Of a stretch of 17,637 nucleotides of DNA, positions 6,001-12,512 are shown one piece after another. Source of the DNA: Fonticula alba ATCC 38817 (lineage: Eukaryota > Protista > Nucleariida); assembly GCA_000388065.2 (NCBI GenBank), contig KB932233.1, one strand, 5' to 3'. A model generated the notes under the pieces. It saw nothing but the letters and a program-made list of their open reading frames with translations. It was not told where the DNA came from and ran no database searches. Positions within the stretch are counted from its first letter, which is position 1. Each line of letters opens with the position of its first letter. A program made the position numbers and the translations under genes.

Positions 6001-7093
6001 GGCTGCCAGGGAGAGGACCCGGCGCCGGGGACCGGCGCTCGCGCGACCAGGCCATCGGCGTCGGTCTCCCCCGAGGCATCGGCCCACGGCGCCGGGACCG
6101 TCCAACAATGGTCCAGCAGGGACCGCGTCGAGACGAACCCACAATTGAAGAGAGCCGCTTGGGCATCGGCGCGCCGGGCCGGGTTCTCTGTCAGCTCGGA
6201 CCCCATGGCCCAGAGCCCACGACCGGGCGGGAGAAAGCGCATGTGGAACATGGCGTCATACATTTCCGTGGCCTCGGCCAGGGCCTGGGGTCGCGGAGCC
6301 GCGACAGGGAGCCAAAAGCGCCGGCATGAACAGAGAGACAGGGGGGGGGGGGACAAAGAAAAAAAGAGGACGAAGGAGGACCGAGAGGTTAGCATGCGGA
6401 ACAGGGGCCAGCGGGCGCCATGGCTTGGGAGGGACACTCCCGGGGGGGGGGGGGGGGAAGGAAGCCCGACGCCCGACGCACCTGGGACTCATCCCAGCCA
6501 ATGTGATGCGCACGGCACCAGCGCTCCTGCATGCGGAAGGTGCCGGTCACCACGCGAGCAACGGTCTCCCACCATTGCTCATACTGACCGACACCGGCGT
6601 CGGGATTGTCCCCGCCCTCGACCTCGCCGTACAGGCAGACCGCCAGCGAGTCGGGCGTCTTCACCCGGGAGTAGGTCCGATGGAAAACCACATGCCCGAG
6701 CCCATTGAAGCCAAAGGGCACCGGCCGGCCGGCATATGTCCGGAGAAAGTCCACCGGCAGGCGGAAGGATGCCAAGCCGTCGAAGTACGACGGCTCGCGT
6801 AGGGACCCGGCAGGCGGCGGGACCGCGGCCGTGGCGGCGCCGGCACAGGCGGTGGTGGAAAACATGGCACGCTGCCAAGAGGCACCGGGGCCCTGGTGGA
6901 GGTACAGCGCCGAAAGTGGGGCTCCGCCAATCGAACCACCCACCGGACCAGGGCCCGGAGTGCGAGCAGTCAACGTCTCGGCCGGACCCGAAGGGGAAAA
7001 CAACTGCCGGATGGCAAGATGCGGGGCACGCCGGGCGGCGCTGATGGCGGCGCTCCGCGTGGAAAGGGGGCCGGCCAGGGCGCGTCCCAACAT
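3027..7093 (-). CDS. nrdJ: Monomeric class II (adenosylcobalamin-dependent) ribonucleoside-triphosphate reductase (NrdJ/RTPR type) with an N-terminal extension. Exons 6482-7093, 4595-6284, 4305-4368, 4102-4184, 3027-3856; 3279 nt, 1092 aa.
   Basis: Motifs seen after splicing: FGFNGLGHVVFHRTYSR, EQWWETVARVV, MFHMRFLPPGRGLWAMG, ALFNCGFVS (C119-equivalent), LMDGAMLGVGIGFD, VPDSRLGWVES, GANPCLEQTLESFELCCLVE (NPCxE thiyl-radical Cys, with the resolving Cys 11 residues later), RNRRVGCSMSG, LTSIKPSGTVSLLAGATPGLHYP, HWADNQVSCTVT, LKGISFLP, YPQMPYERI, and C-terminal CETDTC (CxxxxC shuttle pair as in Lactobacillus leichmannii RTPR). All four donors are GTGCGT and the joined length is a multiple of 3. 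Confidence 0.95.
3908..4092. repeat. Imperfect (GA)n purine microsatellite in RNR intron 4. Similar tracts lie near 970-1030, 9570-9630, 10130-10260 and 15465-15500.
   Basis: Directly visible GA/GAGA/GAAA arrays. On the sense (minus) strand they are CT tracts upstream of 3' splice sites. Confidence 0.85.
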
Positions 7094-7285
7094 GCGAGTG
7101 GAGAGAGAAAACAAATGGAGAAACACGGAGGGGAAGGAGGAGGAGGAGGAAGGCAAGGCAACGCAGGGGCGTGTTTCCGGCGGGGGGAGAAGAGCGGGGG
7201 GAGGAGCGGGGGGAAGATGTCGGCGCGATCTCGCGCCGCCAGAGGTCCCCTGGGCTGGCAAAAAATCCACCGCCCCACATGCCCT

Positions 7286-7303
7286 CCCCCCCCCCCCCCT
7301 CCC

Positions 7304-7350
<47 letters not shown>

Positions 7351-10221: not shown

Positions 10222-10259
<38 letters not shown>

Positions 10260-11180
10260 GGCAGGGTAAGCTTCGGAGGGCAGGAAGAACACAAAACATA
10301 GCCCACTTCAGATGGGGTCTGTTTGCGCATGAAACATGGCGAGAGAGGAAGAAAGAGAGAGGGGCAAGCGGGAAACGGAGGCGCACTTCGCGTCGCCCAG
10401 GTTCGAGGACACCAGATGCTCGACGCGGTTGTGCGCGATGTTCCGATCAATGGAGAGGACCGCATCGCGGGAGAGGTCGTTGGCCACGATGCGCGTGAGC
10501 CCGGGGATTTCGCGCGCATATCGGGCAGCCCGCAGGCCACTGGCACTCAGGGCCTCGAGCACGGTGACCGGGCCCTCGCCGCCGGCGACTAGCCCCTCGA
10601 GGGCGGCCAGCCGCCCGGCCTGGCCCGACTCCGGCGCCACCTCGGCCAGGGTTTGGGTAATGCGCTTCAGGCGGTCGGCCTGTGCCGGCAGGACGTCCGC
10701 CATCAGGCCGGCACCGCACTTGGCCTGGTCGCGCTCCTCCATCCGGCGCAGGGCCACAAAAGTCCGGATGGCCGAGATGGAGATATCCCGGTTGATGACC
10801 TGCGCCGGGTTGTAGAACACCTCGGCCGCCGTGGGGAAAAGAACCGTGGCCGACCCCTCGGTGATGGGGACCAGCTCGGCCGCCGGGGTGATGTAGTCCC
10901 CGATGGCAGGGGACGGTGTCGGAGGGCTGGCAGAAGACGCGGCGTCCATGGCAGGGATGGAAGCACGCGGGCGGCGCACAGAGGAAAGCGGGGCCGATGA
11001 AGAGAAAAACCGCTGGGGGGACACCGGAGACGAGGCGCCGGCAGGGAGGGGGGTGGCGGTGGCGACGGCGGCGACAGCGGCAGCGGCGGACGGCCGGGAA
11101 AAGGCAAGGGCGAGGGCGGGCGAGAGGCAAGTGGAGGACGAGGAACGAGCGACACGGAGAAGTGCAACACGGAGGAACAT
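7957..11180 (-). CDS. TRM1: tRNA (guanine26-N2,N2)-dimethyltransferase Trm1 with an N-terminal mitochondrial-presequence-like extension. Exons 10387-11180, 9740-10111, 9331-9493, 8814-9160, 7957-8635; 2355 nt, 784 aa.
   Basis: Motifs: ITEGSATV..EVFYNPAQVINRDISI, VLEALSASGLRAARYAREIPG..IVANDLS, GDANVVM, VDLDPYGTAIPFLDAA, GGMMLVTCTDMAVLAG, CYSKYG, YCHELALRILL, PLVSLSIDFYIRVFIRV, Cys pairs YQCSAC and FCESCG, VGGPIWTGPLHN, ELPDVPLYYTL, ALLNAGYRVSGSHA, LKTDAP, RF..GWGPMARA. The frame is kept across all GT..AG junctions. Confidence 0.95.
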
Positions 11181-12512
11181 GTGCGGGAGCGCGCGGCGGG
11201 AGGGACAAGCAGCGGGTGCGAGGAGGAGAGGGGGAGGGGGGACGGAGGGCGATCTGGCGCTCGGCCCGCGGCCGCCTCCCCGGCTGACATGAAGCCGGAA
11301 AAATGCCTACCGCACAGGCCGCGCCTCGGCCCCGACCCGCACCTCTGGGAGAGGGTCTCCACCTTGCGCCGCCCCCCCTGCCCTGAAGCGCACGAGAGTC
11401 GACCCGGGGAGAGCATGGAAAAATGGGGAGGCCAGCCAAGATCCTACTGCCTGGCGTCGGGCCTCCCCCGAGGCCAGGGTCGCGCAGGTCGGACAGCACA
11501 ACGCGCGGCCGGCTGCCAACCCATTGACAGAAGGGAGAGTCGGAGCCACGTGCGTCGGCGCGCCCAGCCGAGAATGCCATACGCCACAAGGGCAGCACCA
11601 ACGGATAGGATATGCCGCGAGAGGCGCGCGCGCTCGCTCCCGGGACCGGGGGGGGACGCAGCAAGGAGCGGAAAAGGCAGTACACCGGGGGGGAGGGGGG
11701 GAAGGGGGGTGTATTTTCTCCCTCGCACAGGAGGAGGAGAGAAAGGAAACAACAGTGCGTGTGTGTGCGTGCGTGCGGGACACACGGCACGCGCTTTTCC
11801 TCTTGGTCGAGGGGGGGGCGCGCGCGCAGAGCGCGTGACAGGCACACGGGCGGCACACGCGCAGGGGAGAGGGATATGAAATAATGTACAGAGTATGTGT
11901 GTGTAGGGTTTTCAGCAAGGACAGGAGGGGGTGGGGGGGAGGCGCGGAGGCCGGACCGCACATGGGAGGGGGTGGGGGAGGCAGGGGAGTGGAGAGAAGG
12001 GAACAGAAGAAGCGCGGATAGCAGCGCAGGACAGGGGAAGAGAGAAGGGGGAGGGTGGTAGAGGAGAAAGGGGGTGCCTTCGCCTGGCCACGGGCGAATT
12101 GACTGGGGCGCGCGTGGCCGGGGAGGGGGGGCGGGTGTGGAAGGGGGAGAATGCTGCTCGCCGAGCTGCGACTCTCCAGCCCTTCTTTTCCTTGTGGGTC
12201 CGGCATATCATCCCCTTTGGGCCTCTCGCGCGTGCACATATGTGCGCGTCTGCCGGCGTCGGGTGGCAAAAGCGCGTGGAGGGCGCATCTGCCCATCACC
12301 GCCCGCCTCGCGCCGATGACCCACGCTCGCATCTGGGACGCGCGCGTCCTCCCCCATCTCTCTGGCCGGCCCCCTTCCCCCACATCGCCTTTTTTTTTGA
12401 GGGGGAGGGGCGCGCACGCACGCAGGCACGCACGCGCGGCCGAAGACGCGGCCAACTGCCTGCGCGCCGGTCGGCGGCCCCTCACACTCTCCCCCAGCCG
12501 GCACATTTTGCT

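What the first reader, a model, noticed from the sequence alone, without database searches (positions are those of the whole stretch)
6860..11185. Two adjacent genes share one dual-start layout (weak AUG1 plus presequence, strong in-frame AUG at codon 77/78)
Seen in sequence: the RNR first AUG (7093) has context cgcATGT and the TRM1 first AUG (11180) has cacATGT, both with a pyrimidine at -3. In each gene the very next AUG in any frame is in-frame and has gccATG context: RNR Met77 at 6865 and TRM1 Met78 at 10949 (gccATGG). The other two genes have a purine at -3 (accATG at 1439, gacATG at 16117), which acts as an internal control. Established: yeast TRM1 makes mitochondrial and nuclear forms from alternative AUGs. 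Inference: leaky scanning gives a long mitochondrial isoform and a short cytosolic/nuclear isoform of both enzymes, so the class II RNR could serve both compartments.
Basis: partly seen in the sequence, partly recalled or inferred. Interest (0 to 1): 0.7.

Follow-up and report, generated by a model that had tools for sequence, protein, structure and literature searches.

The report
Two neighbour genes with mitochondrial-type leaders
In the amoeba Fonticula alba, a vitamin-B12-dependent DNA-building-block enzyme and a tRNA-modifying enzyme each start with a probable mitochondrial import signal followed by a second in-frame start, but the shared layout is mostly explained by base composition and production of two protein forms is unproven.

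Summary
Every sequence fact in the finding checks out. The RNR gene has AUG 7093 (cgcATGt), and the next AUG in any frame is the in-frame gccATGt at 6865 (codon 77). TRM1 has AUG 11180 (cacATGt), followed by the in-frame gccATGg at 10949 (codon 78). The two control genes have a purine at -3.

The layout is not statistically remarkable. Both extensions are A-poor, and shuffles give no intervening ATG in 19-97% of trials. Other frames are open too.

The long forms are probably real:
- GenBank models start at AUG1.
- A pyrimidine leader abuts AUG1 in all four genes.
- Frame 0 has the best codon score.
- 26 of 42 eukaryote-type class II RNRs carry N-terminal extensions, many presequence-like.

The dual-start design is not conserved. 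Eight of 11 homologs have a strong AUG1, and most have out-of-frame ATGs before any internal Met.

Both yeasts make their two Trm1 forms from alternative transcription starts, not by leaky scanning. An earlier scan note reports the same on other DNA of this genome (NatD).

Verdict: probable mitochondrial presequences on both genes. A second TRM1 form is likely and a second RNR form is doubtful. The most interesting lead is a mitochondrial role for eukaryotic class II RNR.

The parts
3027..7093 (-). Class II (adenosylcobalamin, monomeric type) ribonucleotide reductase gene, H696_06226, 982 aa, with at least 8 exon blocks
   Evidence: Pfam RNR_Alpha plus RNR-II_ins_dom. P0001 is identical to the translated exon blocks.
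6866..7093 (-). RNR N-terminal extension of 76 codons, from AUG1 (cgcATGt) up to Met77. It looks like a presequence: 7 Arg, 1 Glu, no Asp or Lys.
   Evidence: Sequence. Codon log-odds are +0.22 in frame 0 against -0.31 and -0.50 in the other frames. Composition switches from leader-like to coding-like exactly at AUG1.
6863..6865 (-). RNR second in-frame AUG (codon 77, gccATGt), 48 residues before the conserved PFGFNG motif. Bacterial homologs start about 20 residues before that motif.
7094..7221 (-). Pyrimidine-rich (80-85% C+T) leader immediately upstream of RNR AUG1
   Evidence: The same kind of tract abuts the start codons of the Miro and esterase genes.
7278..7280 (-). Upstream out-of-frame ATG (G at -3, open for 233 codons). 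If transcribed it would interfere with both RNR starts, so the transcription start probably lies downstream of it.
   Evidence: inference about the transcription start
7957..11180 (-). TRM1 (tRNA m2,2G26 methyltransferase) gene; the annotated product is 784 aa
   Evidence: Pfam PF02005 on four exon pieces.
10950..11180 (-). TRM1 N-terminal extension of 77 codons, from AUG1 (cacATGt) up to Met78: 8 Arg, no acidic residue, only 3% A in the DNA
   Evidence: Sequence. Frame 0 has the best codon score, but weakly (-0.15 against -0.45 and -0.61), and the composition resembles the pyrimidine leaders.
10947..10949 (-). TRM1 second in-frame AUG (codon 78, gccATGg), about 23 residues before the start of the TRM domain match
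11181..11250 (-). Pyrimidine-rich leader immediately upstream of TRM1 AUG1
11288..11290 (-). Upstream out-of-frame ATG (T at -3, open for 195 codons)
16115..16117 (-). Control start codon of the Miro GTPase gene (gacATGt). The GTPase domain begins within the first few residues, so this start is secure.
1437..1439 (-). Control start codon of the secreted-type esterase gene (accATGc), followed by a signal-peptide-like N-terminus

Best explanation
Both genes carry a genuine N-terminal mitochondrial presequence that begins at AUG1, so each makes a long, imported form.

The shared 'layout' has no special design behind it. An ATG-free stretch of about 230 nt ending at an in-frame Met is largely a by-product of presequence codons, which are A-poor (rich in Ala, Ser, Leu, Arg and Pro, with no Met, Asp, Glu or Lys) in a genome with 65-70% G+C. 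The two 5' regions are not homologous to each other.

TRM1 very probably also makes a short nuclear/cytosolic form from Met78, as its yeast orthologs do. The mechanism is more likely a second transcription start inside the pyrimidine-rich extension. Leaky scanning past the weak AUG1 could contribute on the long mRNA.

The class II RNR is chiefly a mitochondrial enzyme, like the presequence-bearing class II RNRs of many other eukaryotes. It would make dNTPs directly from NTPs in the matrix, where adenosylcobalamin is produced. A short cytosolic form from Met77 is possible but optional.

What is shown: the sequence facts, the gene identities, the compositional nulls and the recurrence of extensions in the RNR family. 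What is inferred: import, the use of either AUG, and the mechanism that makes two forms.
For: - GenBank models begin at AUG1 for both genes.
- In all four genes of the window an 80-85% pyrimidine tract of about 70-160 nt ends exactly at the annotated start. In the RNR gene, composition flips to coding-like at AUG1, not at AUG2.
- Frame 0 has the best codon log-odds in both extensions, while the upstream flanks show no frame preference.
- The first 30 residues from each AUG1 are acid-free, have 4-5 Arg and are rich in Ala, Leu and Ser. Only 0.15% of noncoding 30-codon windows match this; the thresholds were set post hoc.
- In the eukaryote-type RNR clade, 26 of 42 proteins have 45 or more residues before the PFGFNG motif, against 3 of 64 on the bacterial side. 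Many of these extensions are acid-free and basic, in Blastocladiella, Allomyces, Cladochytrium, Coemansia, Diphylleia, Filamoeba and others.
- Eight of 11 homologs have a purine at -3 of AUG1.
- Yeast Trm1 isoforms and their alternative transcription starts are documented in PMC4152349 and PMC10652106.
- There is no similarity between the two 5' regions.
Against:
- The TRM1 extension is compositionally indistinguishable from a pyrimidine leader (3% A), shows no GC3 periodicity and has a negative codon score.
- 9.4% of noncoding 76-codon windows are open, acid-poor and Arg-rich, so a crude 'presequence look' is cheap in this genome.
- The nearest sequenced relative, Parvularia, has an RNR N-terminus that does not look like a presequence.
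- No validated targeting predictor was available.
- I could not establish whether Fonticula has a class I RNR. If it lacks one, a cytosolic class II form would be required.
Confidence: 0.5

Rival explanations
1. A single mRNA per gene carries both AUGs, and scanning ribosomes partly skip the weak AUG1 (C at -3, T at +4) and start at the stronger AUG2. Both enzymes are then made as a long mitochondrial form and a short cytosolic/nuclear form.
For: - AUG1 has a pyrimidine at -3 in both genes, and AUG2 has G at -3 (plus G at +4 in TRM1).
- There is no intervening ATG in any frame.
- The two control genes have a purine at -3 although they sit in leaders that are 80% pyrimidine.
- Coemansia sp. RSA 1972 shows a similar RNR layout: a weak AUG1, no out-of-frame ATG, and in-frame Met28 and Met39.
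- Yeast MOD5 is an established leaky-scanning case (reviewed in PMC10275265).
Against: - ATG-free stretches are expected from composition, with P between 0.19 and 0.97.
- The context pattern has a chance probability of about 0.06 and was selected post hoc.
- Eight of 11 RNR homologs have a strong AUG1, and most have out-of-frame ATGs that would block leaky scanning.
- TRM1 in both yeasts uses alternative transcription starts.
- An earlier scan note on NatD in this genome reported two mRNAs rather than leaky scanning (not checked here).
- The start-context preference of Fonticula is known here from only two genes.
Confidence: 0.2
2. Annotation over-extension. Met77 and Met78 are the only real starts. 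The AUG1 regions are 5' leader, or lie upstream of the transcription start, and happen to be open and Arg-rich because the DNA is A-poor.
For: - AUG2 has the better context in both genes.
- Neither extension has GC3 periodicity (0.71/0.71/0.71 and 0.66/0.73/0.71, against 0.83-0.87 downstream).
- The TRM1 extension has the same composition as the pyrimidine leaders.
- The other frames are open too, and they also give acid-free, Arg-rich peptides.
- 9.4% of noncoding windows pass a crude presequence filter.
Against: - Frame 0 scores best in both extensions, and positively for the RNR.
- The pyrimidine leader ends at AUG1 in the RNR gene, as it does at the secure Miro start.
- Presequence-like extensions recur in RNR homologs from genomes with ordinary composition.
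- TRM1 needs a mitochondrial form in the other eukaryotes studied.
- If AUG1 lies in the mRNA, it is in frame with no stop, so it would yield the long protein anyway.
Confidence: 0.15
3. Only the long form is made from each gene. A single product is shared between compartments, for example by inefficient import, or by a nuclear signal competing with the presequence in TRM1. Met77 and Met78 are ordinary internal residues.
For: - Several RNR homologs (Blastocladiella, Allomyces, Diphylleia and others) have a presequence-like extension and no internal Met before the core.
- According to PMC10652106, human TRMT1 carries one N-terminal targeting sequence and serves both compartments.
Against: - The weak AUG1 context and the good AUG2 context in both genes make some initiation at AUG2 likely if the standard scanning rules hold.
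- In both yeasts the long Trm1 form is exclusively mitochondrial.
Confidence: 0.15

Closest known systems
Trm1 of S. cerevisiae (Trm1-I / Trm1-II) and S. pombe (M1 / M24)
   Same: It is the same enzyme family (PF02005). Two in-frame AUGs flank an N-terminal mitochondrial targeting extension. The long form is mitochondrial and the short form mainly nuclear (PMC4152349, PMC10652106).
   Different: The yeast extensions are 16 and 23 residues, against 77 here. The yeast isoforms come from alternate transcription start sites, whereas the mechanism in Fonticula is unknown.
Yeast MOD5 (tRNA isopentenyltransferase), with alternative AUG selection on one mRNA
   Different: It is a different enzyme. Start usage was shown experimentally for MOD5, and nothing has been shown here.
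Monomeric class II RNR (NrdJm / RTPR) of Lactobacillus leichmannii, and of eukaryotes such as Dictyostelium, Euglena, oomycetes and early-branching fungi
   Same: It has the same domains (RNR_Alpha plus the dimer-mimicking insertion domain). Fonticula's copy is already listed in the literature as sister to the fungal ones (PMC8085122).
   Different: The papers I read do not discuss localisation, and the Dictyostelium paper calls the role of its enzyme 'enigmatic' (PMC3605638). The Fonticula protein has a 76-residue presequence-like extension and long internal inserts (982 aa against about 660 in bacteria). Oomycete and Umbelopsis homologs have no extension.
NAA40/NatD of Fonticula alba (earlier scan note s1-065862)
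   Same: It is in the same genome and has an in-frame, presequence-like upstream extension of about 108 codons in a 'leaky-scanning layout'.
   Different: According to that note, RNA data pointed to two separate mRNAs. I did not check this.

Membership tests
Monomeric adenosylcobalamin-dependent class II ribonucleotide reductase | N-terminal RNR_Alpha domain and RNR-II insertion (dimer-mimic) domain | tested here: met
   PF17975 at E 1.4e-16 and PF21995 at E 1.1e-10. There are 547 homologs, with the best non-self hits at about 38% identity.
Monomeric adenosylcobalamin-dependent class II ribonucleotide reductase | Catalytic cysteines, B12 binding and enzyme activity | not tested
   I did not inspect the residues, and activity needs an assay.
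TRM1 tRNA (guanine26-N2)-dimethyltransferase | TRM domain (PF02005) along the protein | tested here: met
   Four exon pieces match profile positions 10-109, 112-233, 297-337 and 331-375.
Mitochondrial matrix presequence | N-terminal, free of acidic residues, Arg-rich, Ala/Leu/Ser-rich, able to form an amphipathic helix | tested here: inconclusive
   The composition criteria are met by both extensions. However, 9-13% of random noncoding translations in this A-poor DNA pass the crude criteria. No validated predictor was available.
Mitochondrial matrix presequence | Import into mitochondria and cleavage | not testable with these tools
   This needs reporter fusions or organelle proteomics.
Dual targeting by leaky scanning (MOD5 type) | Two in-frame AUGs flanking the targeting signal, with no AUG in any frame between them | tested here: met
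   This is expected from composition.
Dual targeting by leaky scanning (MOD5 type) | AUG1 in a context that is suboptimal for this organism | tested here: inconclusive
   C at -3 and T at +4 in both genes. The organism's preference is seen only in two control genes, and no genome-wide logo was possible.
Dual targeting by leaky scanning (MOD5 type) | One mRNA species carrying both AUGs, and two protein N-termini | not testable with these tools
No transcript-derived fragments were found.
Dual targeting by alternative transcription starts (yeast TRM1 type) | A second transcription start between AUG1 and AUG2 | not testable with these tools
   The only hint is that the TRM1 extension keeps the pyrimidine-leader composition up to AUG2, whereas the RNR extension does not.

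The most novel reading that the evidence does not exclude
Eukaryotic monomeric class II RNRs are, in many lineages including Fonticula, mitochondrial matrix enzymes. They would reduce NTPs to dNTPs inside the organelle, using adenosylcobalamin made there. This would provide an in-organelle de novo dNTP source for mtDNA and explain the 'enigmatic' retention of class II alongside class I RNR. Fonticula may in addition release a cytosolic form from Met77.
Probability: 0.35. Interest if true: 0.75.

Novelty: new member of a known kind. Interest (0 to 1): 0.42.

Why it matters
Dual localisation of TRM1 through two starts is textbook biology. Finding the layout in Fonticula only extends it to the sister lineage of fungi.

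The RNR side matters more. De novo dNTP synthesis is regarded as cytosolic, and the role of class II RNR in eukaryotes is called enigmatic in PMC3605638. Presequence-like extensions recur on these enzymes across Holomycota, Holozoa, Amoebozoa, CRuMs and Heterolobosea. That suggests a testable hypothesis: a B12-dependent dNTP supply inside mitochondria. None of the papers found in the held library discusses this.

The check also gives a practical warning for this genome. Its A-poor DNA makes open, Arg-rich, ATG-free 'presequences' cheap by chance.

Tried and rejected
2. Transcript-derived protein fragments. A search with RNR exon 1 for fragments that might reveal the 5' extent gave only two distant hits.
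3. Shared origin of the two 5' regions. There is no DNA or peptide similarity beyond low-complexity matches, so duplication is rejected.
4. The upstream in-frame ATG at 7405 as an even longer RNR start. I rejected it because the frame runs through a G-rich tract of about 120 nt, the codon scores there are negative, and the strong out-of-frame ATG at 7280 would intervene.
5. Genome-wide start-codon logo. This was not possible, because only this contig of the genome could be reached.
6. Class I RNR in Fonticula. I found nothing in the scan notes or in the text and supplements of PMC8085122.
7. My first amphipathic-moment threshold did not fit even the two test peptides, so I dropped it.
8. The FastTree placement of Fonticula beside P0015, an intein-bearing and probably prokaryotic protein, is a long-branch placement and was not used.
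9. Joined spliced proteins were not built. TRM1 was analysed exon by exon only, and the full-length Fonticula TRM1 protein was not searched.
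Full report
**What the window is.** The window is a G+C-rich (60-72%) eukaryotic contig. The best protein hit and an exact look-up place it on Fonticula alba GCA_000388065.2, contig KB932233.1. Four genes lie on the minus strand:
- an esterase, 1439 to 66
- a class II ribonucleotide reductase, H696_06226, 982 aa, 7093 to 3027
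- TRM1, 784 aa, 11180 to 7957
- a Miro GTPase, 16117 to 12513

Pfam confirms the two genes of the finding: RNR_Alpha plus the RNR-II insertion domain for one, and PF02005 for the other. The RNR protein P0001 maps back onto eight exon blocks, and exon 1 is contiguous from 7093 to 6482.

- RNR AUG1 at 7093 has context cgcATGt. The next ATG in any frame is the in-frame gccATGt at 6865, codon 77.
- TRM1 AUG1 at 11180 has context cacATGt. The next ATG is the in-frame gccATGg at 10949, codon 78.
- The esterase start is accATGc and the Miro start is gacATGt.
- GenBank starts both models at AUG1.
For the layout to work, transcription must start downstream of them.

**Is it more than chance? Mostly not.**
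- The extensions are A-poor: 9% A in the RNR extension and 3% in the TRM1 extension.
- Dinucleotide-preserving shuffles leave no ATG in 19% (RNR) and 60% (TRM1) of trials. Shuffling codon order leaves none in 62% and 97%.
- Once the peptide has no Met, the statement 'the next AUG in any frame is in frame' is therefore nearly automatic.
- A-poor DNA cannot encode stops, Asp, Glu or Lys. All three frames of the TRM1 extension and two frames of the RNR extension are open, and the off-frames are also Arg-rich and acid-free.
- 9.4% of noncoding 76-codon windows on this strand are open, with at most one acidic and at least six basic residues.
- 47% of all minus-strand ATGs have a purine at -3, so the four-site context pattern has a chance probability of about 0.06 before allowing for post hoc selection.
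- The two 5' regions share no sequence, so the common layout is not a duplication.

**Are the extensions translated? Probably, and more surely for the RNR.**
- All four genes have an 80-85% pyrimidine tract that ends exactly at the annotated start. The Miro start is secure, because its GTPase domain begins within a few residues.
- In the RNR gene the composition flips to coding-like at AUG1. In TRM1 the pyrimidine richness continues to AUG2.
- Codon log-odds favour frame 0 in both extensions: RNR +0.22 against -0.31 and -0.50, and TRM1 -0.15 against -0.45 and -0.61. The upstream flanks show no frame preference.
- Neither extension has the GC3 periodicity of the downstream exons.
- The first 30 residues from each AUG1 are acid-free, have 4-5 Arg, are rich in Ala, Leu and Ser, and have few Pro, Gly or Cys. 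Only 0.15% of noncoding windows match this, although the thresholds were set post hoc.

**Comparative evidence for the RNR.**
- Among 110 homologs with the PFGFNG motif, the prokaryote-type proteins (about 656-664 aa) start about 20 residues before it.
- 33 homologs have 45 or more residues before the motif.
- On a quick tree, 26 of the 42 proteins in the eukaryote-type clade carry such an extension, against 3 of 64 on the other side.
- Many extensions are acid-free and basic. Examples are Blastocladiella, Allomyces, Cladochytrium, Coemansia, Creolimax, Diphylleia, Filamoeba and Percolomonas.
- Oomycete and Umbelopsis copies have no extension, and neither does the nucleariid Parvularia in any convincing form.
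- A presequence is therefore a recurrent feature of eukaryotic class II RNRs, including those in genomes of ordinary composition. This argues that the Fonticula extension is real.

**Is the dual-start design conserved? No.** I fetched the DNA of 11 homologs with extensions and read the start contexts.
- Eight have a purine at -3 of AUG1; for example Blastocladiella and Allomyces both have acc before the ATG.
- Most have out-of-frame ATGs before any internal Met, which would stop leaky scanning.
- About half of the extended homologs have no internal Met before the core at all.
- Blastocladiella (71% G+C) is ATG-free for 104 codons without any second start, which shows again that ATG-free presequences come with the composition.
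- Only Coemansia sp. RSA 1972 resembles the Fonticula layout.
- The family pattern is a dedicated long form. A short cytosolic RNR in Fonticula is possible but not expected.

**TRM1 precedent.** Yeast Trm1 has two forms. Trm1-I, from the first AUG, is exclusively mitochondrial. Trm1-II, from the second AUG, is about 90% nuclear (PMC4152349). In both S. cerevisiae and S. pombe (M1 and M24), the forms arise from alternate transcription start sites (PMC10652106). The leader-like composition of the whole TRM1 extension would fit a second transcription start inside it. The RNR extension shows no such internal leader.

**Literature on RNR localisation.** The Fonticula class II RNR is already known as sister to those of early-branching fungi, all of which also have class I (PMC8085122). 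The Dictyostelium study calls the class II role 'enigmatic' and does not consider targeting (PMC3605638). The survey of RNR transfer does not discuss it either (PMC3019208). Searches combining class II RNR with mitochondrial targeting found nothing. From established knowledge, adenosylcobalamin is made in the mitochondrial matrix in animals, and this RNR type reduces triphosphates. By inference, a matrix location would give it both cofactor and substrate.

**What could not be done.**
The analyses of TRM1 stayed in 10390-11180 and upstream.
- A search for transcript-derived fragments of RNR exon 1 found none.
- A genome-wide start-context logo and a check for class I RNR in Fonticula were out of reach.
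- Spliced proteins were not joined. The full-length TRM1 protein was not searched.

**Verdict.** My estimates are:
- about 0.75 that the RNR is made from AUG1 with a mitochondrial presequence, and about 0.65 for TRM1
- about 0.7 that TRM1 also has a short form, with alternative transcription starts at least as likely as leaky scanning
- about 0.35 that the RNR has a functional short form

The layout itself is a new member of a known kind. The more interesting lead is that eukaryotic class II RNRs may be mitochondrial enzymes.

Noticed in passing
window 7284-7403 (minus strand reads G; plus strand C): An almost pure G tract of about 120 nt lies in the intergenic space between the end of TRM1 and the RNR leader, on the sense strand of both genes. 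It could be a G-quadruplex-forming promoter or terminator element, or a stretch that was hard to assemble.
   Followed up: no
window 1440-1560, 7094-7221, 11181-11250, 16118-16280: All four genes have an 80-85% pyrimidine (C/T) tract of roughly 70-160 nt ending exactly at the annotated start codon. It is a candidate leader or core-promoter signature of this genome and could help call starts.
   Followed up: partly
window 12513-16117, 7957-11180, 3027-7093: Three consecutive same-strand genes all have mitochondrial links: the Miro outer-membrane GTPase, TRM1 and the presequence-bearing RNR. This is probably coincidence, and I know of no evidence for co-regulation.
   Followed up: no
window about 16290-16310: A (GT)n microsatellite lies about 180 nt upstream of the Miro start codon.
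   Followed up: no
window 4362-6437: A 691-codon open frame runs through four annotated introns of the RNR gene without a stop. In this G+C-rich DNA, long ORFs are not evidence of uninterrupted exons.
   Followed up: partly
P0015 (Logan contig, 941 aa): This class II RNR homolog has an intein-like insertion right after the conserved GLG motif near its N-terminus. FastTree joined it to the long Fonticula branch, probably as an artefact.
   Followed up: no
P0147/P0148 (Filamoeba) and P0108/P0125 (unnamed eukaryote): Public protein sets hold both a long form, which starts with a basic extension, and a short form, which starts at the internal Met just before the core, for the same class II RNR. 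These are annotation variants rather than evidence of isoforms, but they show that the start is ambiguous in several lineages.
   Followed up: partly
P0001 versus bacterial homologs: The Fonticula RNR is about 320 residues longer than bacterial homologs, because of several low-complexity inserts rich in Ala, Pro and Gly, plus a long C-terminal tail.
   Followed up: no
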